A DNA stretch of 64,000 nucleotides from IMG/VR virus record IMGVR_UViG_3300029922_000001, positions 62,001 to 126,000 of that record. One strand, given 5' to 3'. Positions 2,104-55,946 of the stretch are shown piece after piece. The notes beneath the pieces are model-generated. The model had not been told where the DNA came from. It searched no databases and worked only from the letters and a program-made list of their open reading frames with translations. Within the stretch, counting starts at the first letter, position 1. The number at the start of each line of letters is the position of its first letter. A program made the position numbers and the translations under genes.

Positions 2104-2129
2104 CAGGGTAATTTATTTATCGTATTGAA
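2104..2129 (+). promoter_or_regulatory. Putative promoter, variant of AAAGGWTTT-N14-GWA
   Basis: CAGGGTAAT-N14-GAA ending 9 nt before ATG 2139; GG-to-GAA spacing matches the other copies. Confidence 0.45.
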
Positions 2130-2138
2130 TTAGAAAAT

Positions 2139-3305
2139 ATGAGTAAACGTATCGCGCAGTTTGGTGGCATAGGAGGTATGTCCAATCAAGGTGCCCCTGG
2201 AAGGTCGCCAATTCAATTTGGTAACGCAGGAAACAATGGTAAACCCAATGCAATACAACCTGATGTTGTATTTGATAGTTTATTAAGTCCTTATCAAATT
2301 GGTTGTGATATTGAAAGAAGTATTGAAAATCAATTGGAAATCTTCCATACCGATATGGAAGCTGACCAAATCGCGTATTTAGATCCAAAACAAAGACAAA
2401 AAATTAAAGATGGTCAATATCTTCAAAGAAGAGATGAATATCGTTATAAGCCTTTGGCTAGTGACGAAAAGCCAAGATACCCTAAATTTGTACCTACAGA
2501 AACCGCTTTAAACAATAAGAGGGTAAACGATGATGCTAGATTAAACCAAGATAATGTCGTTGAACATATTAAACCAGACAGAATTCATATGTCTGCTAGA
2601 AAACTCAATAATGATGCTTTAAGATTTATTTTCGCAGATAATAAATTCGAAGAAGATTTAGATGAAAATTTTGATAATGGTGTTTTCGGGATGAACGCTG
2701 ATGGTGCGGAAATTGCAAGATCACCAACTTCTATGGGTGTTGAAGAAGATACTAATATCAATAACATGAAAAATGAAGGTCAAGATAAATATCATATGGA
2801 CCCTGCTAGTGGTGGATACAATTCCCCAAGTGCGCAATACGAAAAAGGTGGTATTGGTGGACGTAGCCAAGCAGATATTGAACATATGTTAAATGACGAT
2901 AAAGATGTTAGTGTAGGTGGTTATGGTAATAAATTACCAGAAAACGGTCAATTCTCTACATTATACGAAGGTGCTGCTGCCAACTATATTCAACCAGATC
3001 AATATTACAAGACAGATACAGAAGCTAAAACCTCTGAACCTGAATTAGATCCACAAATGAAAGAGTTATTAGATGGTATTATGAATAATTCAGAAGTTAC
3101 TACTGAATCCAAACTAAACTTACATAACAAAGTACAAAATCCTTCTCTTCAGGGTCCACCAACAAAGGACATGGATGCTGGATACAGTCAATATGATGCA
3201 TTAGGTAACAGTAAGGATAATAAATTCTATCAAGAAGCTGAAGGCGCAAACACTTGGAAGAATAACCCAGGTTCAATTGCTCAGCCTAGTAGCCCAATGC
3301 CTTAA
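2139..3305 (+). CDS. Hypothetical low-complexity protein, candidate internal head protein
   Basis: 388 aa, N-terminal KRIAQ then Gly/Met-rich segment; D/N/G/Q-rich; next to terL. Confidence 0.75.
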   Translation: MSKRIAQFGGIGGMSNQGAPGRSPIQFGNAGNNGKPNAIQPDVVFDSLLSPYQIGCDIERSIENQLEIFHTDMEADQIAYLDPKQRQKIKDGQYLQRRDEYRYKPLASDEKPRYPKFVPTETALNNKRVNDDARLNQDNVVEHIKPDRIHMSARKLNNDALRFIFADNKFEEDLDENFDNGVFGMNADGAEIARSPTSMGVEEDTNINNMKNEGQDKYHMDPASGGYNSPSAQYEKGGIGGRSQADIEHMLNDDKDVSVGGYGNKLPENGQFSTLYEGAAANYIQPDQYYKTDTEAKTSEPELDPQMKELLDGIMNNSEVTTESKLNLHNKVQNPSLQGPPTKDMDAGYSQYDALGNSKDNKFYQEAEGANTWKNNPGSIAQPSSPMP

Positions 3306-3331
3306 TATAAAATACGTGTATAAATTAAAAT

Positions 3332-4429
3332 ATGCATTACGATTTTCTAATTGTAGGAACTGGCTTTTATGGAGCTACCTTTGCTAACATAGCCCATGCC
3401 AAGGGCTATAAGGTTAGAATGATCGAACAACGCAATATTCCTGGTGGGAATAGCAGTACTGAATTAATACACAACATAAATGTTCATACTCATGGACCAC
3501 ATATTTTTAGAACAAATAAAGAGGAAATATGGGAGTTCATTAATCAATTCACTAAATTTCATCATTATTCACACAGACTAAAAGTAAGTCATAATAATAA
3601 ACTTTATTCCTTTCCCATCAATTTAATGACAATGCATCAGGTTTGGGGTGTAATGTCTCCAAATGAAGCAAAAGATAAGTTAGAGTCTGTAAGAGTTCAT
3701 AATGATAATCCAAAAAATATGGAAGAGTATTGTCTTTCTTTGATTGGTGAAGAATTATATGAAATTTTCATTAAAGGATATACCACTAAACACTGGGGAA
3801 GATCCCCTAAAGAACTACCTGCTTGGATTGTAAAGCGTATCCCTGTACGTTTCAATCTAGATGATCACTATTACCATAATGATAGTCAATATGAAGGTAT
3901 TCCAATTGGTGGTTACACGCGCATGTTTGAGAATATGTTAATAGACATTCCTGTAGATTACAATACTAACTTCATGGAAAATAAAAAAGAACTCAGCAAG
4001 ATAGCAGATAAGATTATCTTTACGGGTTGTATTGATGAATATTACGATTATGCTTTAGGTCGATTAGAATATCGTTCTTTAGATTTTCATCACGAAGTAC
4101 ACAAAGGAGATTATCAAGGTTGTTCTGTTGTTAATTATGCAGATGTAAATATTCCTTATACTCGTATTGTAGAGCATAAACATTTTGAACATTCTGATTC
4201 GGAATACACAATTATAACTAAAGAATATCCCAAAGCTTATACTACAGGTTCCGTTCCATACTATCCCATTAATGATGATACCAACAATAACTTATTTAAG
4301 AGTTACCAAGAGTTAAGTTCTCATGACAATAATGTGGTTTTTGGTGGCAGACTTGGTTCGTATAAATATTACGATATGGATCATGCAATTGCGGCTTCAA
4401 TGACACTTTCAAAAAGGTTATTGAATTAA
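3332..4429 (+). CDS. glf: UDP-galactopyranose mutase
   Basis: FAD-binding N-terminus LIVGTGFYGA, GGN, HTHGPHIFRTN, EYRSLDF, YTRIVEHKHF, PYYP, GGRLGSYKYYDMD; full length 365 aa. Confidence 0.95.
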   Translation: MHYDFLIVGTGFYGATFANIAHAKGYKVRMIEQRNIPGGNSSTELIHNINVHTHGPHIFRTNKEEIWEFINQFTKFHHYSHRLKVSHNNKLYSFPINLMTMHQVWGVMSPNEAKDKLESVRVHNDNPKNMEEYCLSLIGEELYEIFIKGYTTKHWGRSPKELPAWIVKRIPVRFNLDDHYYHNDSQYEGIPIGGYTRMFENMLIDIPVDYNTNFMENKKELSKIADKIIFTGCIDEYYDYALGRLEYRSLDFHHEVHKGDYQGCSVVNYADVNIPYTRIVEHKHFEHSDSEYTIITKEYPKAYTTGSVPYYPINDDTNNNLFKSYQELSSHDNNVVFGGRLGSYKYYDMDHAIAASMTLSKRLLN

Positions 4430-4438
4430 AAAATAGAA
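4413..4438 (+). promoter_or_regulatory. Putative promoter AAAGGTTAT-N14-GAA
   Basis: Overlaps the 3' end of glf; ends 10 nt before ATG 4449. Confidence 0.6.
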
Positions 4439-4448
4439 AGTAAATTAT

Positions 4449-5210
4449 ATGGGGTTAATCCAAACATTAAGATTGGCAAGCGTCTTAGATGGCATAGGCG
4501 ATGACGGCGATTATGAAAAAGCTGACGCCTTAGATCGTCATGTTCTTGCACAAATAGGTTATATTAACCAAAACCCATCAATTAACTGGTTTTTAAGACC
4601 TTGGAGCGATCACGCGCAAGAATTTAAAGATTCAGATTCTAAGCGTCAAAAATTCCATCAATCTACTATCCCAACTTATGGTAGTGGTTATACTCAAGCT
4701 CCTGAAGATTTTTCAGTTCAACCTAAAAAAGTACAAAATGTAAATGTTAGTGAATCTGCAAAACAAATTTTACAAACCATATCTGCACGTCCATGTTTTC
4801 TAAATATCAGCCTTAGAGGTTGTGGCGCTCAAGGAAGTGCTGTATTTGATGTTAAGATTACCAATAAACCACAAGGCGATAGGCAATTCCCTGTCTCCAC
4901 TGATATGTTTGTGGATTTTATGCCTGATACTGAAGGACACGAAAACGGTATATTAGATTGGAATGGTAAGAATTTTGTTTTTCAATCTCCAAACAAATGT
5001 AAACCACAAACCCAAAATACAAAAGAAGTGAGCGACACTTCTACTACTTTATTTAACATGGACGGTGGTAGCGGTGTTAACGGTCCAGCTTATGTAGTTA
5101 ATGACTACAAGAGTATTGGTATGAACGGTGGTAAAACTGGACCATTCGAATGGAATAGTCAACATCGCACTGAAGGCGTCGGAAGTTGGAAAAACGCCAT
5201 GCCAACATAA
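4449..5210 (+). CDS. Hypothetical protein with N-terminal helical tag
   Basis: 253 aa; RLASVLDGIGDDGDYEKADALD followed by HVLAQ. Confidence 0.75.
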   Translation: MGLIQTLRLASVLDGIGDDGDYEKADALDRHVLAQIGYINQNPSINWFLRPWSDHAQEFKDSDSKRQKFHQSTIPTYGSGYTQAPEDFSVQPKKVQNVNVSESAKQILQTISARPCFLNISLRGCGAQGSAVFDVKITNKPQGDRQFPVSTDMFVDFMPDTEGHENGILDWNGKNFVFQSPNKCKPQTQNTKEVSDTSTTLFNMDGGSGVNGPAYVVNDYKSIGMNGGKTGPFEWNSQHRTEGVGSWKNAMPT

Positions 5211-5255
5211 AGGAATTTGGAAATCGTTTAATAATATAAATATATAGGAGATAAT

Positions 5256-5972
5256 ATGCCCCGATCACCAATTAGACTTGTAAGCCAACAATATGATCTT
5301 GATATTTTCAATGGATCTTTCGAAAACGATGAAGTAGATGGTTTATCCGATTTACAACGCACTTTATTATCTAATGCATCTGTAACTAGAGAAGCATCCA
5401 AAAAGAAAGAACACTTTACTTCTTTATTGGAAATAATCGCTAAATCAGAAGATACCGTAGTAACTGCTGCATCCAAGATTGCTTACAATGATGACACTAA
5501 AATTTATCGTGTTCCAACTGAAATCAATGACGTAGAATTAATTGGCTTAAAAACTCATGGTTTAGTTCAGGGACAAGGTAGATTAGTTAAACTTACTGAA
5601 AGTGGTACTAATTTATTAAGAGATAAGTGGCTTACTTCCGAAAATAATATCAAACAAAAGAGAACCAAACCTAAATTTGATATTTTGAAAGAGCCAAAAT
5701 ATTCATATAGTGCAGCTAACGCCAATTATGTTGATAACTCTGCGTTTAAGGCTGTTGCTAGTTTGAATGATGAACAGAAAGTTGTGTTAGCTGAAAGTAT
5801 CTTAACAGATATTAAAGAAGGATATAATGATGAATTCATTAATGAAAGTCATGCTTATTTACGTCATTTAATCGGTTTAGAAGAAAATTGTCCTAATATT
5901 AACATCGCTACACGAACATTAGTTGCAAATCGTCTTGCATCTTCTGTACAAAGCAATAGACGCAATGGTTAA
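5256..5972 (+). CDS. Hypothetical protein with a possible winged-helix-like segment
   Basis: AGGAG SD; central LKTHGLVQGQGRLVKLTESG resembles a wHTH wing; several [RK]xA motifs. Confidence 0.7.
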   Translation: MPRSPIRLVSQQYDLDIFNGSFENDEVDGLSDLQRTLLSNASVTREASKKKEHFTSLLEIIAKSEDTVVTAASKIAYNDDTKIYRVPTEINDVELIGLKTHGLVQGQGRLVKLTESGTNLLRDKWLTSENNIKQKRTKPKFDILKEPKYSYSAANANYVDNSAFKAVASLNDEQKVVLAESILTDIKEGYNDEFINESHAYLRHLIGLEENCPNINIATRTLVANRLASSVQSNRRNG

Positions 5973-9394: not shown

Positions 9395-9420
9395 AAAGGG
9401 TTTATTATCTTTTTATTGAA
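9395..9420 (+). promoter_or_regulatory. Putative promoter AAAGGGTTT-N14-GAA
   Basis: Intergenic; followed by GGAG SD and ATG 9448. Confidence 0.65.
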
Positions 9421-14850: not shown

Positions 14851-17475
14851 ATGAGTGAAAAAAATATTCCATTAAGGCAAGTTCTGTCCGAGACTGCACA
14901 AAATGTGACAAGAAATGGTAACAAGCAAAAAGTATCTGTTAATGAAGCAATCATTAACAATGCAATGGACGTTATGGTTCCATTTCCTCGTCCTCATGCA
15001 ACTTCCTTTGAAGGTCGTGGTGCTTCTAGAGATCAAGGTTTAACAAGAACAGCCAATAGAATGAATCGTATTGCTTTTGGTGGAATGGGCGGCGGTGGTA
15101 TGGGTGGCGGTATGGGTGGAACTATTTCCACTCCACCACAATTTTATAGACCACAGTTAACCTCTATTGCTTTTAACACTGTTACACAAAGAAAAGAAGT
15201 ATATAACCAAGTTGATTGGTGGTTAAGAAATGAACCTATTATTGCTGCTGCTATTTTATTCTATTCTAGATTTCCCTTTTCTGGTTGGAAATTAGAAGGT
15301 TGCACCAGTTATGTAAAAGAATATTTCGAAAAGTTAATTGCTAAACTAGAGTTTGCTAAATGGCTACCATTAATTGCACAAGAATACTATGCAATGGGAG
15401 ACTGTTTTGTACAAGCTGAAATTAATTGTCCACTTTGTCATGGAAGTATGCAAGATGAATCAGGACAACCATGTAAGCATGAAGGTGCTGTTTGGAAAAA
15501 TCTTTACGTACATGATCCATCTTCTATCGAAGTAAGTAATGCTTATCCTGGTATGCCACCACAATACTACTTAACACCAACAGAAGAAATGAAAAGAGTT
15601 GTTATGGAAAAGCATCCTCGTGAACATTATGAGGCAATTCCAAATAAACTCAAGATGACTATTGCACAAGGTAATCCTATTCCTTTAGATCCTAGTTGTC
15701 TTACACACTTTAAACATTTTGGTAATGCTTATGCACCTTTTGGCAACTCTTTAATTAAGCCACTATTTCCATTGCTTATGTATAAAGATAGATTGCGCCA
15801 AGCACAATGGTTAATTGCAGAGAGGCACATTCTACCCATCAAAATCGTTAAGTTGGGTTCTGATAAGCGTTATGCTGGTGAAGCCGATCTACAGGCAGTA
15901 CAAGAGGAATTAGCAGCAGTTGCTAACGATCCATTCTTGACCTTAGTCGTACCTCATGACTTTGATTTTGAATTTTACGGTGCAACAGGTAAAGTACTTC
16001 AAATTACAGAAGAATTTGGACTTATTGAAAAAGAAATGATCAATGGTTTGATGCTTAACCAAGCTATTCTTAGTGGTGAAGGTCCTTCATACGCTAATGC
16101 TTCTATCGGTTTACTTGTTATGGCAAGACGTTTAGAAGAATTTAGAAATATAGTTGCAGAATGGATTCAAGAAAAATTATTCAAACCTGTTGCTATGTGG
16201 AACGGTTTCGAAGAAGAAGATGATACAGGTACTACTAAATATATTTATCCTAAGATTAAGTTTGATGACTTACAACTTAAAGATAACACTGGAACACTAC
16301 AGATTGTTATGCAATGTGTTGCTCAAGGATTCTTACCAGTACAAACTATTGTTGAAATGTTAGACTTAGATTGGGATACTCAAGTTGAAAGATTACGCTT
16401 TGAACAATCTATCAATATTATGCAAACCCCATCTGTTACTGGTACTGATATGGGAACAGGATTTAGAGGTCCAATGGGTGCGGATATGTCAGGTGGAATG
16501 GCTCAACAAGCTGGATTACCACCATTACCAATGGGTGGAATGGGTGCTGGTGCATCTGGAAATCCTGGTGGTGCTGGTGGCGGTGGTGCTTTGCCAGGTC
16601 AAGGAAACATCCCAGCAGTAGCTACAATACATTCACCTTGGGCTAGAGTTGCACAAGAAGTTCCTGAAGCTTACAGAATCGCACAAGATTTAACACGTCA
16701 CATTTATAACGAATACAATTTCTCTCAAGTTGATCAAACTAGTAGAGATAAAGGTAGTTATTCTTTGGTTAGAACCGCAGAAGAAAGTATTGGTATGTAC
16801 CGTAAAGCACATGCTATTACTAAAGAAGTATTTATGGAAGCATTAGATAATCCTAGATACAAGCGTAAGGCATCTAGAATCAAGAGTGCGGCTCATGCTA
16901 AGTTCTTAGAAACAGTTCGCCCTATTACTGGTAGAGGTTTCGATAAGCAACTATTACCTGAAAATGAAGTTTACTTTGTTGATTTTGGTAATTTTGTAGG
17001 AACTGGCGTACCAATGAACCGTCTCGCTATTAGAGATTACTTCTTTGATGATTCAGTACAAGAAATTGATGGCGTCAGAGTTGTAACTGCTCAAAGAAAG
17101 CCACAAGTTAATTTGCCTAAAGAGTACTTTACCAGTATCGAACAAGCACTTTACAATATCGTACTTGAAGCTGGTATTCCTTATGCATTTTATGCACAAT
17201 TTGCGGCTGGACCTGATGGTAAATACAAGATTGATGGTGCTTTCCCAGCAATTAAATTAGGGTTTGAAGCTGACTCAGAATCTTTCCACTCTCATGATGA
17301 TCAAATTGCTAGAGATAGACAAAGGGATCAAGAGTTAATGTCTCAAGGTTGGACAATTATGAGATTTACAGATCACGACATTAAACAAAAAGATAAAGAG
17401 GTACTTCGTGTTATCCAAGAAGTTGCATCAAAAATCATGGGACAATCCAGTAACTCCAATACTATCCAACTTTAA
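14851..17475 (+). CDS. Portal protein with C-terminal DUF559-like endonuclease domain
   Basis: Portal-like segments NEPIIAAAILFYSRFP, YAPFGNSLIKPLF..L..KDRLRQAQ, PIKIVKLG, IINGL-like region; position between terL and protease. C-terminus YKIDGAFPAIKLGFEADSESFH..RDRQRDQELMSQGWTIMRF is DUF559-like. Confidence 0.82.
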   Translation: MSEKNIPLRQVLSETAQNVTRNGNKQKVSVNEAIINNAMDVMVPFPRPHATSFEGRGASRDQGLTRTANRMNRIAFGGMGGGGMGGGMGGTISTPPQFYRPQLTSIAFNTVTQRKEVYNQVDWWLRNEPIIAAAILFYSRFPFSGWKLEGCTSYVKEYFEKLIAKLEFAKWLPLIAQEYYAMGDCFVQAEINCPLCHGSMQDESGQPCKHEGAVWKNLYVHDPSSIEVSNAYPGMPPQYYLTPTEEMKRVVMEKHPREHYEAIPNKLKMTIAQGNPIPLDPSCLTHFKHFGNAYAPFGNSLIKPLFPLLMYKDRLRQAQWLIAERHILPIKIVKLGSDKRYAGEADLQAVQEELAAVANDPFLTLVVPHDFDFEFYGATGKVLQITEEFGLIEKEMINGLMLNQAILSGEGPSYANASIGLLVMARRLEEFRNIVAEWIQEKLFKPVAMWNGFEEEDDTGTTKYIYPKIKFDDLQLKDNTGTLQIVMQCVAQGFLPVQTIVEMLDLDWDTQVERLRFEQSINIMQTPSVTGTDMGTGFRGPMGADMSGGMAQQAGLPPLPMGGMGAGASGNPGGAGGGGALPGQGNIPAVATIHSPWARVAQEVPEAYRIAQDLTRHIYNEYNFSQVDQTSRDKGSYSLVRTAEESIGMYRKAHAITKEVFMEALDNPRYKRKASRIKSAAHAKFLETVRPITGRGFDKQLLPENEVYFVDFGNFVGTGVPMNRLAIRDYFFDDSVQEIDGVRVVTAQRKPQVNLPKEYFTSIEQALYNIVLEAGIPYAFYAQFAAGPDGKYKIDGAFPAIKLGFEADSESFHSHDDQIARDRQRDQELMSQGWTIMRFTDHDIKQKDKEVLRVIQEVASKIMGQSSNSNTIQL

Positions 17476-18139: not shown

Positions 18140-18165
18140 AAAGGTTTTGCCTATGAATTTTAGAA
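18140..18165 (+). promoter_or_regulatory. Putative promoter AAAGGTTTT-N14-GAA, flanked by a 14-bp inverted repeat
   Basis: Intergenic upstream of the protease; arms at 18124-18137 and 18183-18196. Confidence 0.65.
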
Positions 18166-18232
18166 AGGTGAAATATATGTGGTTTTTCAAAAAATCATTT
18201 CTGAGCATCGTTTAAGGGAGCCAAAAGAAAAC

Positions 18233-21200
18233 ATGATACGCAAAGGAATATCAGGCGGTGTAATAGGTTTAAACAATTTAATTTGTTTGAACAAAAAAGA
18301 AGCAAACGCAATTAAGGCTAGAATCTTAACGGCATCTAGTTTGCGTGAAAGTGCCCGTATCGGTTTGCAACGTTTGTATGCAGACCCCGAAGATGCACTA
18401 AAGAAATATAAAGGAACCGAATTTGACATCGCCAACGAAATGCTTGAACGTCGTGGCATGAAATTACTATGGGTTAGATGTAGAGCTATTGACGCTAACG
18501 TAGTAAATGCTAATGGTGATTACTTCTCTACTAAAGAGTTATTGAAAGAAACCATACACAATGGCAAAAAAGTTCCAGCCTATAAAACATTTGAAGGCGT
18601 ACCAATTTATACCAATCATGAAAATGATGACATTGAAAAAGCAAAAGGTACTGTAGTTTATGCAGAGTGGGACGAAAAGGAAGAAGCGGTTTATTGTGTA
18701 TTTTACATAGACGAAGAAGCTTATCCCGAAATTGCTCATGCTATTCGTGGTGGAATTATGCACGACGTTAGTATGGGTTGTTTTATTCCAGGTACTAGAG
18801 TATTAACTAATTCAGGATATAAGAATATTGAAAATGTAAATATAAACGATTTACTTTTAGATAAAGATGGTAATTTTACCACTATAGTTAATAGACAAAT
18901 TAAAATTAAAAACGAAGATATTTTTGACATTAAATTTAATGGCGGCTTAACCATTAGTGCAACAAAAGAACATCCTCATTTTGTATTTAAAAAAGATGTA
19001 TGGAAATCTAGAAAAACTAGAAATAAACCAGGCAAAGGAAAAGAACGATGGTCTTATAAAGATATTGGAGAGCCAATTGAAATTACTTCTGAAAACTTAG
19101 AAGTTGGTGACGTGCTAGTAACACCTATTAATCAGGTTGAATTAAATCCTGATAATATAACTCCTGATTTCGCTAGATTATTAGGTTATTTTTTGGCTGA
19201 AGGAAATTTTCTTAAATACAATGATTCTATTAAAGAATTAGAGCTTACTTTTGGTCTTCACGAAAAATATACATTAGTTCAAGAATTTATTACACTTTTT
19301 TCAAAAGAATTTCCAAATTCTACAATTAGAGTATATGATCGTATACCTAACAATAATTGTGTTATTAGAGTATATGACACTGAAATAGCTAATTTATTTT
19401 ACAAATATTGCGGAGAATATTCTGATAGTAAAAAACTAGATTCATCATTAATGTTCCTTCCTAAAAATATTCAATTAGAATTAATCAAAGGGTATTTTAA
19501 TGGTGACGGTTGTATTCATCGTGCTAAAGATCGTGTTATTGGATTAAGCGCATCTTCTTGTTCTTTGGATTTAGTAGAACAAATCTCAATGATATTATTT
19601 AGAAATGGAATTTATCACAAGAAAAATGGAAGAATTAATGGGAAATATATTGAATATACCAAATCTAAAGAAGCATGGAAGCAGAAAGGTGATTTTAGGA
19701 AAACATATTATGAAATTTCTATTCCTCAAGCTTATTGTCCTCAATTGTTAAATGAAACTAGATTTGATTTTCAACCCAACTTACGACAAGATAATTTTCA
19801 TTATGGTAATTGGATAATTCATCCAATTAAAAACATAATCAAAAGACACTATGAAGGATTAGTATATAATTTTGAAACAGAAAGCCATACATATATGGTT
19901 GAGAATTTTGCTACTCATAATTGCGCGGTTCAATCTGGTAATTGTTCAATTTGTGGCAAAGAAGCAGTTAAGGAAGATGATTACTGTAGTCACATGAAGA
20001 ATTACAAGGGTAAGAAATTCCCTGGAACTGGCGAAATTGCTTACGAAAAGAATAAAGATATTAAGTTTATTGAAATCTCTATTGTTGCAGATGGTGCTTT
20101 TGATTCTTGTATGATTAAAGAAATTTACGAACAAGAAGAAATTGAAAATGCTGCTTCACAATTAAGACATAAGACTGCAAGTGTACAAGCAAACATTCTA
20201 TTAGCTGAAAACAATCTTCCAGAAGACATGCTTGAAAGAAGAAAGAGTGAAGAATTCTTACGTGCTATCAATAATTGTAATATTGAAATCTTTAGATTCG
20301 CTGAAAAATTAGGACACACAACTAGAATAGCTCAAGAAGCTGGAACATTAGTTGGTGGACAAATGGGTGGTGGACAAATAGGACAAAACGCTACAGTTAA
20401 TACACTAATGCAATTACTAGGTATTGATCCTACTACTGGATTAAATATCTTAGACATGTTGAACTTAGCTCTTAACTTCTTAGAAGTTGCAGTTATGGAA
20501 TTACTTTCTAAGAGTAGTTCAGTTAAGCTTGAGTACGTTAACAAGGTGACTAAAGCTATGACAGATTTACAAGATGTTATGGAAGACGTTATTAATGACG
20601 GTGTTGATGTTGCACAACAACCACAAGGTGTTCAATTACAAGGTGGTCCAGTTTCACAACAGCAACCAGTACCAGGACAGCAACCACAAGGACAACAACA
20701 ACAAACTCAAGTACCAGGTCAAGGACAACCAGGACAGGTACAACAGCAAGCAAATGTTATGCCAATGGCTTATCAACCAGCAGTTGGTCAGGTAACAGGT
20801 CCTATGTTTGGCGCTTTACCTGGTGTTACAGCTACATCAAGTAATAGAAAATTAGTATGGGCATCACATGATGACGATGATGTTCGTGAGGTTTTTGCCT
20901 CTAGCAATAGAGGTACCAGTGTAAAGAAAGTTAAATCTTTCGATGAAGCTTTAACTCACATTGGAGAAGTAGTTATCAAACTAGCAAGTGCAGTTGGTGT
21001 TGCTGACGATTCATCACTAAAAGCACTCAATTTTAAAATTAAAAAGAATCAAGAACAAAGCAAATCGACTCAACCCGGAGGAAACAATATGGAAAACAAC
21101 ATCTTCAACGAAATGGCGCAAAGACATCGTTTGCGCAACGCATCCAAACTCTCTATTGATGCAGTGTTTACAGACCACTCAAATAGATATAGTGTAGCCA

Positions 21201-23794: not shown

Positions 23795-23836
23795 AATGAT
23801 GCCCACTATTTCGATAGTGGGCATCATTGTTTTATT
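23795..23836 (+). terminator. Rho-independent terminator after the protease gene
   Basis: Perfect 15-bp stem AATGATGCCCACTAT / ATAGTGGGCATCATT, TTCG loop, T-rich tail. Confidence 0.85.
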
Positions 23837-23888
23837 TTTCCCCAACAGTAAAAAAAACCGCGATATTTATTCCTTCGTTTTCAAATAA

Positions 23889-23914
23889 AAAGGATTTTTC
23901 CATTTTTTTTAGTA
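23889..23914 (+). promoter_or_regulatory. Putative promoter AAAGGATTT-N14-GTA
   Basis: Intergenic, between the terminator and the scaffold-decoration-capsid genes. Confidence 0.65.
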
Positions 23915-23971
23915 TGAGTAATATGTAAGCACTCAATTGAGTGCAAGACAGATCGCAGGAGCGAGTCAAAT

Positions 23972-26464: not shown

Positions 26465-27334
26465 ATGTCATCAATGATTAGAAATAATAAAGCATATAAT
26501 GAACAAAGAGAAGCCATCATTGCAATGGCAGTGGAAACACCTGATGGTCGTTCCGCTCTTGCTGGAGCTATGGTAGACCCTATCAAGAACGCTCTTAACT
26601 ACCAAGGCGTTATCCGTAAATTAATTATGGTAGACGAACTACCTCAAGGTGCTTACCCTCGCTACGAAAGAGATATTACAGTCAAAAGCTGGATCATCGG
26701 TAATCGTGCTGGTGTACCTGTTAGCGTTATCGAAGGCGAAGACTTATTTATCCCTACAGTCGAATTAGCAGCATTGCCTACAATTCGTCTCCAAGAGGTG
26801 AAAAGCAGGAGATATTACATAGTAGATCGTGCCCAAGTTAAGGCTAAGGACTCTCTACAACGTCAAGAAGATACTCTAGGATTTGAAGTTATCAACGCTG
26901 CTGTTCCAACAGAACAGTCAATTACAGTAGTTGGACAATTGCAACCTGAGAACCTTAACCACGCTTTAACACTTATTGAAGAACATGAATTGGTCGGAGC
27001 AAAGATAGTCCTTCCTCCTTCACGTTACAAAGATATTAGAGGCTTTGGTAAGGAATTCTTTGATGAAGCAACTCAAAGAGATATCTTAATGACAGGACTT
27101 TATGGACACATTTACTCTGCGGACATCCACGTAAGTACTATGGTTCCTAAGAACTGTGTGTATATCATGGCTCCTGCCCAATTCGTTGGTGCAATGCCTA
27201 TTCGTCAAGACGTTACAGTTATCCCTGCTGACGATCCTCGCAAGCTTCGCTTGGGTTGGGTAGTCTACGAAGATATCGGTATTGGCGTCATCAACGACTA
27301 TTCTTTGGCTCGTATTCAAGTAACTGTTTCCTAA
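26465..27334 (+). CDS. Major capsid protein (HK97 fold)
   Basis: AGGAG SD, strong terminator downstream; ALAGAMVDPIKNALNYQGVIRKL, VDELPQG, VDRAQ..A...QRQED, GLYGHIYSADI, GWVVYE pattern of large-phage capsids. Confidence 0.85.
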   Translation: MSSMIRNNKAYNEQREAIIAMAVETPDGRSALAGAMVDPIKNALNYQGVIRKLIMVDELPQGAYPRYERDITVKSWIIGNRAGVPVSVIEGEDLFIPTVELAALPTIRLQEVKSRRYYIVDRAQVKAKDSLQRQEDTLGFEVINAAVPTEQSITVVGQLQPENLNHALTLIEEHELVGAKIVLPPSRYKDIRGFGKEFFDEATQRDILMTGLYGHIYSADIHVSTMVPKNCVYIMAPAQFVGAMPIRQDVTVIPADDPRKLRLGWVVYEDIGIGVINDYSLARIQVTVS

Positions 27335-28849: not shown

Positions 28850-28875
28850 TATAAAATTTGCCACCTAAATCCTCT
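28850..28875 (-). promoter_or_regulatory. Putative promoter AGAGGATTT-N14-ATA
   Basis: Ends 10 nt before ATG 28839. Confidence 0.5.
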
Positions 28876-45597: not shown

Positions 45598-45623
45598 TAC
45601 AAGAAAGATTGGCTAAATCCCTT
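45598..45623 (-). promoter_or_regulatory. Putative promoter AAGGGATTT-N14-GTA
   Basis: Ends 10 nt before ATG 45587. Confidence 0.6.
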
Positions 45624-46701: not shown

Positions 46702-47961
46702 TTATTTTTTCTGTGTGGGTAATTGATTTCCTTTTTCCACAACACTTTGTTGATATTTTTGTACAGCTTCATAAACCTCATTTGCAGAAGCAGAGTCAAT
46801 ATATTCAATCATACTCTTGCCTTGCCTCATAGCTAGAAGGGCAGATTTCCAAGGAGTTGATTCAGCAATGTAATTAAAAGCAGTATCATCTAAATCTTTA
46901 TTAGCTTGGTATATTTCATTTAAATCATTCATTAAACTAATAACACTAATGACGGGTTTGTGAATAGACATGATTTGAGGTTCACCAATACTAGACATGG
47001 CTGTTGTCGAAGATATAGTGATAACTGTTTTGGTAAACGTCGTACCGCCAGTTCCATCAGTGCCAGTGCTAGGAGAGCCAACATCTAACATAAAAAATTC
47101 TGGAGCATAAAGAGATAAAAAGTCGATAGCTTCTTTATTAGAAGCTGTTGATTGTGCTGTTATAGATCGCTGTTGTGCTTTAGGTATTACACTGGTGTCA
47201 TATGACATAGTTCGCATTTTTAATCGCTTAAAATTAGAATCACACAAGACAATTCCCTCATGAATTTCTTCCAATGTATTTAAATAATTAAATGCTTCTT
47301 CAATACTATTAACTATTAGGTATAATGGTTTATCAACACCAATATCAATATCGTCTATTGATATTTCTTCAAGATTAGAGTCCACCACACACAATAATTG
47401 TATATAAGGTTTGTCATATAGAATACCAACTCGTAAATCTTCATCAAAAACTTCAAAACTGTAACTGTAACCAGGTATTAATTTTGATGTAAACTGTTCC
47501 CAAGTTAAATGATAAACATCCAACAAAATGCTTCTAAAAACATCAGCAAATGTACGTGAGTGATTTGAAAAATTAACTGATCCAGCTAAAATATTTGCCG
47601 TGGGATGTATTCTGCAACCAATATGCCAACTATTTTTATAGTAATACACAAACAATAAAGCGCCGTCATACTTAATAGACGCTCTGGCTTGATTCCAATC
47701 AAAATTACGTTGTACGGAAAATGCATTAGGTTCTCCATAATAGAAAAATGCATTTAATGACTTACATACAACATTCCAACTTTCATTCTCTAAGATTAAC
47801 CCGCGACTCTCTTGAACCATTGGTATATGCAACGGACTAAAATTCGTATAATTGAATAAGACCAATGGTAATTCACTGTCCACAGTAACTTCTATGTTAA
47901 AATCCTGCTTTATATCTTGCAGTGTCTTACCATCTAATAAATATTTTTGAAGCTCCAGCAT
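46702..47961 (-). CDS. RNA ligase, T4 Rnl1-like
   Basis: LVLFNY, QESRGLIL, KSLNAFFYYGE, motif I KYDG, SFEV, EGIVL, KRLKMR. Confidence 0.82.
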   Translation of the reverse strand: MLELQKYLLDGKTLQDIKQDFNIEVTVDSELPLVLFNYTNFSPLHIPMVQESRGLILENESWNVVCKSLNAFFYYGEPNAFSVQRNFDWNQARASIKYDGALLFVYYYKNSWHIGCRIHPTANILAGSVNFSNHSRTFADVFRSILLDVYHLTWEQFTSKLIPGYSYSFEVFDEDLRVGILYDKPYIQLLCVVDSNLEEISIDDIDIGVDKPLYLIVNSIEEAFNYLNTLEEIHEGIVLCDSNFKRLKMRTMSYDTSVIPKAQQRSITAQSTASNKEAIDFLSLYAPEFFMLDVGSPSTGTDGTGGTTFTKTVITISSTTAMSSIGEPQIMSIHKPVISVISLMNDLNEIYQANKDLDDTAFNYIAESTPWKSALLAMRQGKSMIEYIDSASANEVYEAVQKYQQSVVEKGNQLPTQKK

Positions 47962-47972: not shown

Positions 47973-49859
47973 TTATACATTTTTTATTTTGCAAATACCA
48001 AATGTTGGTTTAGTAGATACATCAACAGGAATTATGTTAAAGTGATATGTTTCTTGAATATTTTTTTGAATGGAATACAATAAATCCTCAGTACCATAAA
48101 TAACCATCAATTGTTTAGGCTGTAAAGTCGGTATTAGTATTTTAAGTAAATTATCCAATTGTGTACCAGCAGTTTGAAGAAATAAAGGATTGGTTGATAC
48201 TGCCAAAGTATCCAACAAAATTAAATCACTATTTTGAACTTGGTATTCAATGTCATTTTCTATGTATGGCTTGTGAAGACTTATAAGCTTTGCCAACATA
48301 AGATGATCTTGATAAATAAGCTTAATATTTTGCGTTATCTTAAATGGTGCATGTTCATACAAATCCTGAAGATCCTTATTCATCCCATTAATAACGGAAT
48401 AGACCTTTTTGCCCTGTAAAGCAGCATGTAGACAAAATATACCATTACCAGGTGTAGCTTCTAAGACACTCTTAATACCATTGCCTTCCAAAATAGAGTT
48501 AAATGTGTTTATTGCATTTGTGTTGGGACTCAAATCATTAGCAAAAGTCCTGCCTGTAGTATTAATAAACATATTTGGGTCCATATCGACATTGAATCCA
48601 ACTTTAGACTTAGCAATAAACCCATCTAACAATGCCCTGGAATTACCGTTAAAATGTAGAATTTTAGCTGGCAGTTTATTAACATCATCTATGCTTTTTA
48701 TTTTATCCAAGTGAGAATGTAGCTGATAATTGTAACTATTCTTAATGAAAGCTGTGTTTTTTAGTCTAATAGTGGCAATGTTAGTTAATATTTGTTCTCT
48801 AATGGAATTAAACTTGTGCGATTCCCAAATTTCTGCTTTTGGAAACATTCTCAATAAGATATCTTCTATTGCATAGAAAGCCTGTCGTGAACCACCATAA
48901 ACACCTGTGTTGATTACTATTTTAGACTTACATTCATCTTCGGTTAACCCTAAATCTATTAATTCTTCAAGATTAGAATCATAAATCCATGATGCAGATT
49001 CATATAGTCTAATATAAGGTGTCATCCCTAATTCTTTAGTGGTGATAAAGACACTATCATCTAAAACCTTCAATGCTTCTAATAATTGACCAACAACATC
49101 TTCTTTAAACAACATATCACAGTCTAAAAATAAGAAATATTCAGAATCACACACATGAGGAATGGAGTGAGAAATTAGTTTCTTACCAATAGCTGTTTTA
49201 TTCTTTTTGTCTTCGCATTTAATTTCAATTACATTATTGTCTAAACAAAACTTTTCAACTTCAGGCGTACTATCAAAAGAAAGAGCGATAAATTGCAGAT
49301 CGTTTAAGTTTGAAACTTCACTTAATGAATCCAGCATGGATTTGAACAACTTTAGGAAGTTGGGTGTAATGGTTGTCATTATTGAGATTGGCTTAGAAGT
49401 GTTTTTAGGAGTTGTATTAGCCCATAAATGAGAGAAGCATCCTTGGAATTTATTAATTTTCTCTTTACTTAATTTGGGATCAATCCAGATGCTATGAGCA
49501 TTACCTGTGGTTTTTAAAGTGAGTATTTTAGCTCCACGTAAATTACAAGCAATGCTTCTCTTTCCATCCCCTTTAATCAATTGTGGTATGTGAGCAACTA
49601 ATAAATCATCCGCATATACAAAAAATTCTGAAAATCTATCATCTAAACAAGTGGAATTTATGCCAACCTCCATAATTAGAGATTCCCATTCGCCGTTTAA
49701 GTCGAAAACTAATTCACTAGGTGGGTGAGCAGAAAAACTACGTGTGTAATATTGATCTTTGACGTTGATCCACTCATTATCATAACCAGTCACACCTGAA
49801 TAACCTATATTCTGGTATCCAGACACTGCTTTAATGGGTTTCAAGTCATCTAAATACAT
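47973..49859 (-). CDS. NPCBM - GT8-like glycosyltransferase - methyltransferase-like fusion
   Basis: N-terminal YLDDLKP..SAHPPSELVFDL..VGIN..YADD..HSIWIDPKL (NPCBM); FLFLDCDML, INTGV, EQ, YNYQ, ILHFNG (GT8); VLEATPGNG (SAM-binding-like). Confidence 0.75.
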   Translation of the reverse strand: MYLDDLKPIKAVSGYQNIGYSGVTGYDNEWINVKDQYYTRSFSAHPPSELVFDLNGEWESLIMEVGINSTCLDDRFSEFFVYADDLLVAHIPQLIKGDGKRSIACNLRGAKILTLKTTGNAHSIWIDPKLSKEKINKFQGCFSHLWANTTPKNTSKPISIMTTITPNFLKLFKSMLDSLSEVSNLNDLQFIALSFDSTPEVEKFCLDNNVIEIKCEDKKNKTAIGKKLISHSIPHVCDSEYFLFLDCDMLFKEDVVGQLLEALKVLDDSVFITTKELGMTPYIRLYESASWIYDSNLEELIDLGLTEDECKSKIVINTGVYGGSRQAFYAIEDILLRMFPKAEIWESHKFNSIREQILTNIATIRLKNTAFIKNSYNYQLHSHLDKIKSIDDVNKLPAKILHFNGNSRALLDGFIAKSKVGFNVDMDPNMFINTTGRTFANDLSPNTNAINTFNSILEGNGIKSVLEATPGNGIFCLHAALQGKKVYSVINGMNKDLQDLYEHAPFKITQNIKLIYQDHLMLAKLISLHKPYIENDIEYQVQNSDLILLDTLAVSTNPLFLQTAGTQLDNLLKILIPTLQPKQLMVIYGTEDLLYSIQKNIQETYHFNIIPVDVSTKPTFGICKIKNV

Positions 49860-51205
49860 TATTTAAGCTCCTTATACAAAAACTCCACATTTGGAGTGAA
49901 ATTCAAAATAGTATTATACTGCTGTAAAAGATTTATTCCGTCATCTGCTGTAAAGAGTAGAACTTTAATATCTCCATACTCAGAAGTTGCAACGATCTTA
50001 TCGTGAACGTTGAAAATTTGCAGATTCTGAACGTTGTGTGGTAATTCACCATACTCTCTGTCTAGCGTAGTTATGTTTTTGCTTCTACATCCATATAGAT
50101 TTAACAAAGCGCCGTGACGATTCCATGTTTCACCATATTTTGACTGTTCCCACTCAGCTAAATACGGATAAAAAGTCTTAATGGCACTATCCATTGCCAT
50201 CATTGCCTTTTTAGAAGCTAAAAAGAAAACCGAGTTAACAACGGTACTATAATGTCTTTCATTCTCATTAATTCGTAATTTTTCTAAGTCGCCTCTACTA
50301 GACACATAAAGATTTAAACCGGGTTCAACCATTGATGATTCGATTGTTGTAATGAAATTAGGTTTATATAATGGTGCAACGACATTATAAACAGGAGTGA
50401 CATTGAAAATATCAACTAAAGGCATAACGTTATCAAAAAATATCACACCAGGAGTGAGACTGATATAGTAATCAGCATTGACAACATAATGTGTTTTGTA
50501 TAAAGCAGTCTGTTCAGTGCCAGGGTTGCTTTTAACCACCATTTCACATTTAACCCAAAATGGTTTAAATGCACTAAATTTCCTCATTACATCTTCTGAA
50601 AGATTAAAATAATAAAGTATTAAAGGCGTTTTAGAACCATCATTAAAAGCGTAAAACGAAGAGAGTGTCTTTAATGCCATTTCCACCTTGTCTTCAGCCA
50701 CACACATAGCAATAGCTGTCTTAAATTTAGCTTTAGGCATGACATTAATTGGAATTCTAATTTTCCCAACAGGACCACTCGTATACACTGGTTTAGTTTT
50801 AAACAATAAAGGCTCTATCCATACTGAATGTGCATGTTGGTGAGTGTTACTGTGTGTGATTAGTTTTAATTGTCGTACACCTTCTAAATTAATATCTAAG
50901 TATACAATACCGTTTTCTTGTTTAATACCATTAGCTATACCTAATAATTCTTTACCAGACCATATTTGGAAATCAATAGAGACATAATCTGAACCTGTAT
51001 CGTTAATTGCGCATCCAATAGTCATCCAAGAGTATTTAGCATCTAAATCGTAAATTAATTCAGAGTTAGAATGAACACTAAGCGAATTCAAGAATTTTTG
51101 ACCTTTGATAGCGATAAATTTATCTTCAAAACCAAGAGTGCCATTTAACCCCAATTCTCCATATCCAGTTTTCTTTTCTATAGGAGTTGTTCTACTGAGA
51201 AACAT
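49859..51205 (-). CDS. NPCBM domain fused to a degenerate GT8-like domain
   Basis: SLSVHSNSELIYDL..AIND..FQIW..HSVWIEPLL (NPCBM); C-half follows the GT8 layout but has YYISLTPG where DxD is expected. Confidence 0.65.
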   Translation of the reverse strand: MFLSRTTPIEKKTGYGELGLNGTLGFEDKFIAIKGQKFLNSLSVHSNSELIYDLDAKYSWMTIGCAINDTGSDYVSIDFQIWSGKELLGIANGIKQENGIVYLDINLEGVRQLKLITHSNTHQHAHSVWIEPLLFKTKPVYTSGPVGKIRIPINVMPKAKFKTAIAMCVAEDKVEMALKTLSSFYAFNDGSKTPLILYYFNLSEDVMRKFSAFKPFWVKCEMVVKSNPGTEQTALYKTHYVVNADYYISLTPGVIFFDNVMPLVDIFNVTPVYNVVAPLYKPNFITTIESSMVEPGLNLYVSSRGDLEKLRINENERHYSTVVNSVFFLASKKAMMAMDSAIKTFYPYLAEWEQSKYGETWNRHGALLNLYGCRSKNITTLDREYGELPHNVQNLQIFNVHDKIVATSEYGDIKVLLFTADDGINLLQQYNTILNFTPNVEFLYKELK

Positions 51206-53360: not shown

Positions 53361-53376
53361 AATATCATTATACATT

Positions 53377-53943: not shown

Positions 53944-54031
53944 CTGTTTTAACTCCAATATCATTCTCTTTTTTGACGTACATAATAAGGCATATAATAA
54001 ATAAGCTATAGTATATATAAGAAGAATTTTT

Positions 54032-55036: not shown

Positions 55037-55046
55037 AAATATATGT

Positions 55047-55072
55047 TACAAAAAAAGAGAGAAGAAACCTTT
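55047..55072 (-). promoter_or_regulatory. Putative promoter AAAGGTTTC-N14-GTA
   Basis: Ends 10 nt before ATG 55036; overlaps a terminator hairpin. Confidence 0.6.
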
Positions 55073-55087
55073 AATTTCTTCTCTCTT
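55050..55087 (-). terminator. Rho-independent terminator for 55105-55872
   Basis: 13-bp perfect stem 55055-55067 / 55075-55087 followed by a T run on the minus strand. Confidence 0.7.
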
Positions 55088-55104
55088 CATAATACATGTA
55101 TATA

Positions 55105-55872
55105 TTAATCTAGTTCAAGATCAATAGATTCACCCATTCCACCTAAGTCCAAGTCAACATCTGGTTGATCTAGGTCAAGTGCAATATCTCCTTTAGCTGC
55201 GTATCTACGAGTTGCGATACCACCATGTCCATCAGCTTCAGCAACATAGGCATTACCTCTTTGCTGTTGTTGTGGATTGTAAGCTGGTCTATTTAACATA
55301 GCAGGACTAATGATGTTACTCTTATTCTTAGCTAAGTGTTCTGCGAAATCGGCTGGATCTAGGTATTCACCCTTGGCAGCAGCTTCATCAGAAGCAATTT
55401 GGAAAGCCGTGACGAATGAACGAGAGTCATTTGCATATCCAGCAGTAGAGACACGACTCTTTTGCTTACCTGTAGCGGAATTAATATCCATCAATTGTGG
55501 AGCATTACGTCCGTATTTCTCACGAATATGGGATTCTCTTTCTTCTTGTGCCCAAGCTTCTTGTTCTTTTTCTTGCTTTCTCTTACGAAGCATAGTATAT
55601 GTTTTTCTGTCAATACGTTGTAGAAAACCGCAGTCTAGTGCCGCAGTTAAATCGCGTGAACCACGAACGTACATAGGGTTTTCATGAGTTAAATCTTCTG
55701 CCTCAAATGGGGGAATAGATAACTTGATGTCACCAATAAATAAAGGTGTAGGTACAATGCTTCTAACAAGGAAATCGGTTGGATTTGCATCGGTGTTAAA
55801 GCTTCTTTCTTCTGCTTGTGCGTTTTTAGCGCCTAATTTTGACGAACGTTGTGGATTTGATAATTTTCCCAT
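55105..55872 (-). CDS. Hypothetical protein
   Basis: 255 aa, AAGGAG SD, own promoter motif. Confidence 0.75.
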   Translation of the reverse strand: MGKLSNPQRSSKLGAKNAQAEERSFNTDANPTDFLVRSIVPTPLFIGDIKLSIPPFEAEDLTHENPMYVRGSRDLTAALDCGFLQRIDRKTYTMLRKRKQEKEQEAWAQEERESHIREKYGRNAPQLMDINSATGKQKSRVSTAGYANDSRSFVTAFQIASDEAAAKGEYLDPADFAEHLAKNKSNIISPAMLNRPAYNPQQQQRGNAYVAEADGHGGIATRRYAAKGDIALDLDQPDVDLDLGGMGESIDLELD

Positions 55873-55920
55873 TTTTCTCCTTTTTTTGTTTTTACCGTTT
55901 TTACGGGGGTAAATATTGTA

Positions 55921-55946
55921 TTCTGAATTTATATAAAAAATCCTTT
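55921..55946 (-). promoter_or_regulatory. Putative promoter AAAGGATTT-N14-GAA
   Basis: Best consensus copy, continuing as GAAT; upstream of 55872. Confidence 0.65.

What the first reader, a model, noticed from the sequence alone, without database searches (positions are those of the whole stretch)
2104..55946. Recurring bipartite promoter-like motif AAAGGWTTT-N14-GWA
Seen: fixed 14-nt spacing in at least nine places, always oriented towards a gene: 2104, 4413, 9395, 18140, 23889 (+) and 28850, 45598, 55047, 55921 (-), with weaker variants near 5209, 12559, 28904 and 56398. In five copies the motif ends 9-10 nt before an ATG with no SD; in the other four a longer leader carries a GGAG SD. Established: it resembles the Bacillus sigma-H consensus (RnAGGAwWW..GAAT). 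Inference: late promoter read by a phage-encoded alternative sigma factor or a host sigma-H-like factor.
Basis: partly seen in the sequence, partly recalled or inferred. Interest (0 to 1): 0.6.

Follow-up and report, generated by a model that had tools for sequence, protein, structure and literature searches.

The report
SigH-type late promoters, jumbo phage
The repeated motif is a real set of late-gene promoters in a 441-kb phage; it has the layout of Bacillota sigma-H promoters, and the phage carries its own sigma-H-like factor that probably reads them, often starting the mRNA right at the ATG.

Summary
The window is bases 62,001-126,000 of a 441,498-bp jumbo phage, distantly related to Bacillus phage G, and holds its structural module: portal, prohead protease and major capsid protein. 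The strict pattern matches only 3 of the 9 listed sites, and 4 more match with one mismatch. The element is still real. Near-matches are about 6-fold enriched on the gene-ward strand of intergenic DNA. An ORF-opening ATG lies exactly 10 nt after GWA far more often than at other offsets. In five orthologous intergenic regions from metagenomic relatives (45-69% protein identity) the box, the 14-nt spacing and GWA are kept while the spacer diverges. The layout is the one reported for SigH-dependent promoters of Clostridioides difficile. The genome has no multisubunit RNA polymerase hit but at least four sigma genes. One of them, 5 kb upstream of the window, matches SigH models far better than any other sigma family and has a syntenic ortholog in a relative that also keeps the motif. 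The sites head the portal, protease and scaffold-capsid operons. Of the weaker variants, 5209 is real and 12559 doubtful. Sites 28904 and 56398 are not this motif; 56398 is a conserved TGTATAAA promoter. A new site lies at 46709-46734 (-). No transcript data could be obtained.

The parts
23889..23914 (+). Best copy (exact match). Heads the operon of a 598-aa acidic scaffold-like protein (23972), a 226-aa protein and the major capsid protein (26465-27334). Leader of 57 nt.
   Evidence: The AGGA box, T-run and GTA are conserved in relatives L020 and L021 while the flanks diverge (A1). The capsid protein is 46% identical to phage G gp27.
23925..23971 (+). Structured 5' UTR downstream of the 23889 promoter. 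It has a 5' stem-loop and a second hairpin that shows the GGAG in its loop.
   Evidence: Fold of -16.1 kcal/mol, z -4.4. A 19-nt block around the SD is invariant in L020 and L021, and the first stem appears to change on both sides (not counted formally).
18140..18165 (+). Exact match upstream of the prohead protease gene, which carries an intein. The probable start is ATG 18233, preceded by a GGGAG SD.
   Evidence: Protease and intein/LAGLIDADG matches. No ortholog data.
9395..9420 (+). One-mismatch copy heading the operon 9448 to the portal gene (14851-17475). Leader of 27 nt with GGAG.
   Evidence: In L026 the box, the 14-nt spacing and TTGAA are kept while the spacer differs (A8). Portal identified.
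4413..4438 (+). One-mismatch copy; ATG 4449 lies 10 nt after GAA (leaderless type). The box overlaps the 3' end of the upstream UDP-galactopyranose mutase-like gene.
   Evidence: L026 and L027 keep the box, 14 nt, GAA and an ATG 9-10 nt later, with different spacers (A6).
5209..5234 (+). Variant with TAA in place of GWA. Leader of 21 nt with GGAG; ATG at 5256.
   Evidence: The box and spacing are kept in L026 (TAA), L027 (GTA) and the near-identical L028 (A7).
2104..2129 (+). Degenerate candidate (4 mismatches in the box, GAA kept); ATG 2139 lies 9 nt after GAA.
   Evidence: Leave-one-out score is negative. No informative ortholog. Weakest of the set.
28850..28875 (-). Candidate with an AGAGGATTT box and ATA in place of GWA; ATG 28839 lies 10 nt after it.
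   Evidence: No ortholog found: the L020 neighbour is not homologous.
45598..45623 (-). One-mismatch copy; in-frame ATG 45587 lies 10 nt after GTA. The box lies in the 3' arm of a strong hairpin ending the upstream gene (stop at 45629).
   Evidence: Hairpin of -21.8 kcal/mol, z -5.3.
46709..46734 (-). Leader of 18 nt with an AGGTGA SD; ATG at 46690. The box lies inside the 3' end of the RNA-ligase-like gene.
   Evidence: Fourth best score with a weight matrix built only from relatives. Geometry.
55047..55072 (-). One-mismatch copy; ATG 55036 lies 10 nt after GTA (leaderless type). The box sits in the loop and 3' arm of the terminator of the upstream gene.
   Evidence: Terminator scan finds 16 pairs; fold of -18.9 kcal/mol. 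In L023, L024 and L025 the stems differ but a hairpin, the box, 14-15 nt, GTA or TAA, and an ATG 9-10 nt later are kept; three of the four proteins begin MS[AC]F and L024 begins MSAH (A3).
55921..55946 (-). Exact match. Leader of 48 nt with GGAG; ATG at 55872.
   Evidence: The box and spacing are conserved in L023, L024 and L025. Their -10 region reads G(T/A)ATA(C/T)A (A4).

Best explanation
The motif is a class of late promoters of a 441-kb jumbo phage. It is bipartite. An upstream box, (A)AAGG(A/T)TT, sits at about -36 to -28. Exactly 14 nt later comes a short downstream element, G-(A/T)-A, at about -13 to -11. Transcription is expected to begin 10-11 nt after that element.

Host core RNA polymerase is directed to these sites by a SigH-family sigma factor. 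The most likely one is the phage's own SigH-like protein, encoded at G000:56284-56937 between the clamp-loader and sliding-clamp genes, about 5 kb upstream of the window. That gene would be expressed with the replication genes and would then switch on the structural operons.

At five sites in the window, and at several elsewhere in the genome, the predicted start coincides with the A of the ATG, so the mRNA would be leaderless. At the other sites a leader of 18-67 nt carries a GGAG-type Shine-Dalgarno sequence.

Shown here: the sites, their orientation, their fixed geometry, their conservation in relatives, their position before structural genes, and the presence of a SigH-like sigma. Inferred: promoter activity, the start sites, the timing, and which sigma reads them.
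For: Statistics.
- One-mismatch matches: 11 on the gene-ward intergenic strand against 1.83 +/- 1.37 expected, and 2 on the away strand.
- A weight matrix built only from relatives' sites puts 9 of 22 hits scoring 13 or more, and 12 of 41 scoring 12 or more, into the gene-ward intergenic class, which is 2.5% of the search space.
- An ORF-opening ATG lies exactly 10 nt after GWA in 6 hits, against about 0.7 per other offset.

Conservation. Five orthologous intergenic regions keep the box, the 14-nt spacing and GWA while the spacers diverge. A first tally, with two rows of site 4413 out of register, gave identity to the window of 0.74 for the box, 0.81 for GWA, 0.46 for the spacer and 0.48 downstream.

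Gene context. The sites head the portal operon, the prohead protease, and the scaffold-like protein plus major capsid protein.

The reader of the sites.
- No RNAP beta-prime match in the genome.
- The SigH-like sigma scores 111 and 105 bits on SigH models against 38 bits for the next family.
- Its only PDB hit is the sigma-H factor 3MZY.
- Its homologs at 36-37% identity are bona fide SigH that pass a curated SigH cut-off.
- Its 4.2 recognition helix and region 2 are shared with them.
- A 47%-identical ortholog lies in the same synteny in contig L080, from sample SRR14005094, which also yielded L024 with the conserved promoters.

Precedent. C. difficile SigH promoters have the same box, spacing and, on my reading of the table, start distance (PMC7438776 Table 3).

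Genome habit. Two other promoter classes in this genome also place the ATG 5-7 nt after their -10 element. That arrangement precedes about 100 ORFs for GGTATACW and 121 for TATAAT spaced 4-8 nt from the ATG (107 at 5-7 nt; the TATAAT count was not restricted to called gene starts).
Against: - No transcript 5' ends or expression data exist.
- The element is loosely defined. Only 3 exact copies exist, there is no enrichment at two mismatches, and full-width weight matrices barely beat a reversed-matrix control at low thresholds.
- The T of the canonical sigma-H GAAT is not conserved, and several sites have GTA, TAA or ATA.
- The SigH-like protein scores below the curated SigH cut-offs.
- Three or more other phage sigma genes could read the sites instead. 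One of them (59271-59876) lies directly before the structural module.
- At 4413 and 46709 the box lies in coding sequence. At 45598 and 55047 it lies inside terminator hairpins, so part of its conservation could have another cause.
- The host is unknown.
Confidence: 0.62

Rival explanations
1. The sites are promoters read by the host's own SigH (Spo0H), not by the phage protein. Late phage transcription would then be tied to the host's transition-state physiology, and the phage SigH-like gene would serve another purpose, such as manipulating sporulation.
For: The motif matches host-type SigH promoters. The UDP-galactopyranose mutase gene's best genome matches are Clostridia/Eubacteriales MAGs at 44-46% identity, a weak hint that the host has SigH. 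Published phage sporulation-like sigma factors have been found dispensable for lytic growth (PMC9429907).
Against: The phage keeps a SigH-like gene in conserved synteny in at least two lineages that also keep the motif. A lytic 441-kb phage that depends on a stationary-phase host sigma for its capsid genes would be fragile. The host is not identified.
Confidence: 0.12
2. The AAAGG box is bound by another phage factor. This could be a different phage sigma, for example the 201-aa one at G000:59271-59876 just before the structural module. It could also be a MotA-like activator working with host sigma-A on a shared G-TATA-type -10 element.
For: In relatives the -10 element of the 55921 ortholog reads GTATAC, like the -10 GGTATACT of the abundant early class. 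The box occupies the same position relative to that -10 as the early-class box. At least four sigma genes exist. Phage G also has a sigma gene beside its terminase gene and structural module.
Against: The T at -7, the hallmark of sigma-A -10 elements, appears no more often than composition predicts in the window sites (and my count). The box sequence and spacing fit SigH promoters specifically. Only one of the phage sigmas is SigH-like.
Confidence: 0.16
3. There is no promoter. The similarity would be a by-product of AT-rich intergenic DNA, A/T runs and terminator hairpins.
For: No enrichment at two mismatches. Reversed-matrix controls give similar counts at low thresholds. Two boxes lie inside terminator hairpins.
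Against: The strand bias is 11 against 2. The ATG sits at a fixed offset. The box, the spacing and GWA are conserved across diverged spacers in five orthologous regions, including hairpins whose stems have changed.
Confidence: 0.05

Closest known systems
SigH (Spo0H)-dependent promoters of Bacillota (B. subtilis consensus RnAGGAwWW, 11-12 nt, RnnGAATww, from my own knowledge; C. difficile set in PMC7438776 Table 3)
   Same: An upstream box with an invariant AGG flanked by A's and followed by A/T. A gap of 14 (to 15) nt to G-A-A. A start about 9-12 nt after GAA, on my reading of the table. The phage sites have the same register.
   Different: The final T of GAAT is not conserved, and GTA, TAA or ATA often replace GAA. 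The sites lie in a phage, before structural genes, and many would give leaderless mRNAs. Dependence on SigH is untested.
Phage late or middle promoters read by phage-encoded sigma factors (SPO1 gp28 and gp33/34, T4 gp55; from my own knowledge, and cited in PMC9429907)
   Same: A phage without its own RNAP encodes alternative sigma factors. A distinct promoter consensus precedes its structural genes.
   Different: The consensus and the sigma belong to the SigH family rather than the SPO1 or T4 types. At least four sigma genes and three promoter classes occur in one genome.
Phage-encoded sporulation-like sigma factors (SP10 g120, Goe3 g157, Eldridge g168/g169; PMC9429907)
   Same: A phage gene homologous to a Bacillota sporulation-pathway sigma factor.
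   Different: The published cases are SigF/SigG-like. They are discussed as auxiliary genes acting on the host, and one was shown to be dispensable. Here the homolog is SigH-like and matching promoters sit before the phage's own capsid, protease and portal genes.
Bacillus phage G (Donellivirus gee, 498 kb)
   Same: Closest named phage. The portal is 27% identical and the major capsid protein 46% identical. A sigma gene lies beside the terminase gene and structural module.
   Different: In the first 34 kb of phage G the intergenic regions show SD-led genes and no such motif or leaderless layout. The phage G sigma gp3 is not similar to the SigH-like protein.

Membership tests
SigH-type promoter | Upstream box RnAGGAwWW with an invariant AGG | tested here: met
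   Ten of the 11 window sites have AGG in register at box positions 3-5 (2104 reads GGG), preceded by A's and followed by A/T-rich bases. The box is conserved in relatives. The same box appears in the C. difficile SigH set.
SigH-type promoter | Fixed gap of 14-15 nt between the 9-nt box and GAA(T) | tested here: met
   The gap is 14 nt at all window sites and 14 nt in 11 of 13 relatives' sites by my count; two (the L024 site-55047 and L025 site-55921 orthologs) fit better at 15 nt. The C. difficile examples I counted have 14-15 nt.
SigH-type promoter | Downstream element GAAT | tested here: inconclusive
   G-(A/T)-A is kept: GAA at 6, GTA at 3, TAA or ATA at 2 of 11 sites. The following T is not enriched. 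GTAT variants do occur among the lower-scoring C. difficile SigH promoters.
SigH-type promoter | Transcript start about 9-12 nt after GAA, dependent on SigH | not testable with these tools
   There is only indirect support: an ORF-opening ATG lies 9-10 nt after GWA at many sites.
SigH sigma factor (for the protein at G000:56284-56937) | Score above the curated SigH model cut-offs | tested here: not met
   NF006148 scores 111 bits against a cut-off of 208. TIGR02859 scores 105 bits against 295. The protein is therefore SigH-like, not an equivalog.
SigH sigma factor (for the protein at G000:56284-56937) | SigH is the best-matching sigma family over the full length, with region 2 and the 4.2 helix conserved | tested here: met
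   The top five NCBIfam hits are all models of the SigH group (PRK08295/TIGR02859), covering 4-192 of 198 positions; the next family scores 38 bits. The only PDB hit is sigma-H 3MZY. Residues invariant with bona fide SigH include K, D, N, R, I and K of the 4.2 helix.
Phage late promoter read by a phage-encoded sigma | The phage lacks its own RNAP but encodes sigma factors | tested here: met
   No PF00623 match; T7-like single-subunit RNAP was not searched. Four sigma-family genes plus two weak matches.
Phage late promoter read by a phage-encoded sigma | The sites precede virion structural genes and are expressed late | tested here: inconclusive
   Position before the portal operon, the protease and the scaffold-capsid operon is shown. 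Timing is untested.
Sigma-70/SigA-type promoter (TTGACA, 17 nt, TATAAT) | TTGACA-like -35 element and a -10 element with conserved T at -7 | tested here: not met
   The box is AAAGGWTTT. Information content after GWA is low. True TGTATAAT-type promoters exist elsewhere in the window and are distinct.

The most novel reading that the evidence does not exclude
A SigH-family sigma factor has been taken over by a lineage of very large phages as the master switch for virion genes. Its promoters are still close enough to the host SigH consensus for cross-talk in both directions: the phage sigma could turn on the host's sporulation-entry regulon, and host SigH could fire phage late genes. The same genome appears to run a largely leaderless expression programme, with roughly 200 of about 576 called ORFs placing a -10 element 5-7 nt before the ATG, in three promoter classes.
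Probability: 0.25. Interest if true: 0.75.

Novelty: new variant of a known kind. Interest (0 to 1): 0.6.

Why it matters
Phage-borne homologs of sporulation sigma factors have mostly been read as tools for manipulating the host. Here a SigH-like one comes with matching promoters in front of the phage's own capsid, protease and portal genes. That would make it a core regulator of a 441-kb phage.

The case gives a directly testable sigma-promoter pair, and the means to annotate late operons and true start codons in an uncultured phage lineage. Gene callers mis-set at least one leaderless start here: 55036 was called at 55018.

It also exposes a genome in which a large share of genes appear to be leaderless, which is unusual for a phage whose other genes use GGAG ribosome-binding sites.

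Tried and rejected
- Megablast of the window against the phage collection found no match.
- A viral-contig scan with the 598-aa protein, and exact-pattern scans with the conserved 5' UTR block, returned nothing or only the genome itself.
- Phage G intergenic regions were read for the motif. None was found, and its genes are SD-led.
- Dyad enumeration over gene-ward intergenic DNA was dominated by TATAAT-ATG and tRNA-like signals. It gave only a faint AGGAA-N17-GAA signal.
- Full-width weight matrices, from the window sites or from the relatives, discriminated poorly at low thresholds against a reversed-matrix control. Restricting the matrix to informative columns worked.
- The region upstream of 28839 could not be compared, because the L020 neighbour is not homologous.
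- Pfam and PHROG scans of most genes downstream of the sites gave nothing.
- A phiKZ/AR9-type multisubunit polymerase was considered and set aside (no PF00623 match).
A handful were compared by eye only.

Full report
Setting

The window is G000:C1:62,001-126,000 of a 441,498-bp IMG/VR virus record. The record has 34% G+C, reads well in the standard code and is about 91% coding. The window holds the structural module:
- a portal gene at 14851-17475;
- a prohead protease gene interrupted by an intein with a LAGLIDADG domain, at 18179-23788;
- the major capsid protein at 26465-27334, 46% identical to Bacillus phage G gp27.

Phage G is the nearest named phage, but it is distant: the portal is 27% identical.

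Checking the observation

The pattern as written is too strict for most of the listed places. It matches exactly at 18140, 23889 and 55921, against 0.14 expected. It matches with one mismatch at 4413, 9395, 45598 and 55047. In all there are 9 one-mismatch hits against 4.2 expected, and two of them lie inside genes. At two mismatches the pattern is no more frequent than chance. Site 28850 has two mismatches and 2104 has four.

What makes the set non-random is where the hits lie and how they are arranged:
- Genome-wide, one-mismatch hits number 11 on the gene-ward strand of intergenic DNA, against 1.83 +/- 1.37 in resamples of those same segments. Only 2 lie on the opposite strand.
- A weight matrix built only from sites in other genomes, using only the informative columns, places 9 of its 22 best hits in the gene-ward intergenic class. 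That class is 2.5% of the search space.
- Among the matrix hits, an ORF-opening ATG lies exactly 10 nt after GWA six times, against about 0.7 per other offset. A reversed matrix gives no such peak.

Five sites have the ATG 9-10 nt after the motif. Four have longer leaders that carry GGAG. For 18140 the likely start is ATG 18233.

Conservation in relatives

Three protein searches found metagenomic relatives at 45-69% identity, plus one near-identical genome. Their contigs are L020, L021 and L023-L028. They allowed six orthologous intergenic regions to be aligned.

At 23889, 55921, 55047, 4413, 5209 and 9395 the relatives keep three things: the AAAGG-type box, the 14-nt gap (15 in two cases), and G/T-A/T-A. 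The spacers and flanks have diverged.

At 55047 all four genomes have a terminator-like hairpin whose stem sequence differs from genome to genome. The box still sits in its loop and 3' arm, with GTA 14-15 nt later and an ATG 9-10 nt after that. Three of the four encoded proteins begin MS[AC]F and the fourth begins MSAH. This supports the leaderless ATG at 55036 over the start at 55018 used by the pipeline.

At 56398 the conserved element is TGTATAAA plus an SD. That site is a different, sigma-A-like promoter. Site 28904 has no box either.

What the motif is

The C. difficile promoters shown to depend on SigH (PMC7438776 Table 3) have an (A/G)AGGAwww box, then 14-15 nt, then GAAT. If the tabulated sequences end at the mapped start, as I read the table, the start lies 9-12 nt after GAA. 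The phage motif has the same box, the same register and the same implied start distance. At the leaderless sites that distance puts the start on the A of the ATG.

The genome has no match to the RNAP beta-prime domain, but it encodes at least four sigma-70-family proteins. One of them, at G000:56284-56937, is specifically SigH-like:
- SigH models score 111 and 105 bits over their full length, and the next family scores 38 bits.
- Its only solved-structure match is a sigma-H factor.
- Homologs at 36-37% identity include bona fide SigH that pass a curated SigH cut-off.
- Its region 2 and its 4.2 recognition helix share invariant residues with them.

The gene lies between the clamp-loader and sliding-clamp genes. 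The same arrangement, with a 47%-identical ortholog, occurs in contig L080 from sample SRR14005094, which also yielded L024 with the conserved promoters. The protein scores below the curated SigH cut-offs, so I call it SigH-like and not SigH.

Most likely mechanism

The SigH-like sigma is made with the replication genes. It binds host core polymerase and initiates at these promoters, which head the portal operon (9395), the protease gene (18140), the scaffold-like/capsid operon (23889) and further virion-module genes.

Two sites overlap the terminators of the preceding genes. One transcript would end where the next begins.

The 23889 leader is strongly structured and invariant around its SD, as might be expected for a highly expressed capsid operon.

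Promoter activity, timing and the identity of the sigma are inferences. Host SigH, another phage sigma, or an activator working with sigma-A remain possible.

Wider context in the genome

- About 100 ORFs, almost all at 338-441 kb, follow AAATCCCCAAY, 13 nt, GGTATACT, 6 nt, ATG.
- 121 ORF-opening ATGs lie 4-8 nt after TATAAT (107 at 5-7 nt), often as TGTATAAT and sometimes with a TTGACA 17 nt upstream. This count was not restricted to called gene starts.

So roughly 200 of about 576 called ORFs appear to be leaderless. Two relative contigs (L020, L021) each show one similar TATAAT-type case. The first 34 kb of phage G show no such layout.

Novelty

Phage late promoters read by phage sigma factors are a known kind. 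SigF/G-like sigma genes in phages have been described (PMC9429907). A review of jumbo phages does not mention SigH-like factors. I found no description of a SigH-like phage sigma paired with SigH-type promoters on virion genes, nor of a leaderless programme in a jumbo phage. These searches cover open-access text only.

Limits

The host is unknown. The only hint is that a UDP-galactopyranose mutase gene is closest to Clostridia MAGs at 44-46% identity. Sites 2104, 18140, 28850, 45598 and 46709 have no ortholog test.

Noticed in passing
G000:C1 about 338,000-441,498 (outside the window): A highly stereotyped promoter, AAATCCCCAAY, 13 nt, GGTATACT, 6 nt, ATG, precedes about 100 mostly small ORFs, nearly all on the + strand. 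The spacing is exactly 6 nt in 92 cases, which implies leaderless mRNAs. It may be read by one of the other phage sigma factors.
   Followed up: partly
window 2086(-), 27423(+), 28432(-), 51205(-), 53360(-), 56433(+), and genome-wide: A sigma-A-like (TG)TATAAT element lies 5-7 nt before the ATG of many genes: 121 ORF-opening ATGs genome-wide lie 4-8 nt after TATAAT (not restricted to called starts). With the early class, roughly 200 of about 576 called ORFs look leaderless, although other genes use GGAG.
   Followed up: partly
G000:C1 59271-59876(+), 229402-229983(-), 397154-398047(+), 56284-56937(+); weak matches near 47798 and 252660: There are at least four sigma-70-family genes in one phage genome. 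One is generic ECF/FliA-like, one SigB/F/G-like, one divergent (297 aa) and one SigH-like.
   Followed up: partly
window 18179-23788 (+): The prohead protease ORF is 1869 codons long. It contains an intein splicing domain and a LAGLIDADG endonuclease domain.
   Followed up: no
window 14851-17475 (+): The portal protein carries a C-terminal DUF559 / restriction-endonuclease-like domain at residues 789-858.
   Followed up: no
window 23835-23876 (+): A TTTTTCCCCAAY box of the early-promoter type, followed by GATATT, is conserved in relatives about 50 nt upstream of the 23889 late promoter. This may be a tandem second promoter for the capsid operon.
   Followed up: no
G000:C1 207,607-207,768 (+): Three tandem 41-bp repeats, each carrying AAAGGTTTT, 14 nt, TAA, lie upstream of a 1732-aa ORF starting at 207757.
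   Followed up: no
L028 10831-11991, equivalent to window about 5210: In the near-identical genome (295-kb scaffold) an IS605-family OrfB/TnpB gene is inserted right after the stop codon of the 253-aa gene, inside the 5209 box. A box with the same spacing is still present at the right-hand junction.
   Followed up: partly
window 9358 and 18126 (+): The 12-nt palindrome TTTTTTGAAAAA lies just upstream of the 18140 box and 37 nt upstream of the 9395 box, and is conserved in L026. TTTCAAA also precedes the boxes at 4413, 9395 and 23889. It may be an upstream element or an operator.
   Followed up: no
window 28880 and 56375 (-); also G000 170.2, 177.1, 236.6 and 137.2 kb: A TCCTGC motif recurs in divergent intergenic regions. 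It is not conserved in the relatives at 56398.
   Followed up: partly
window 3332-4429 (+): This is a UDP-galactopyranose mutase-like gene (GLF domain in the relative's annotation). Its best genome matches are Clostridia/Eubacteriales MAGs at 44-46% identity, a weak clue to the host.
   Followed up: partly
window 47973-49859 and 49859-51205 (-): Two adjacent large proteins each begin with an NPCBM/NEW2 carbohydrate-binding domain. They may be receptor-binding proteins.
   Followed up: no
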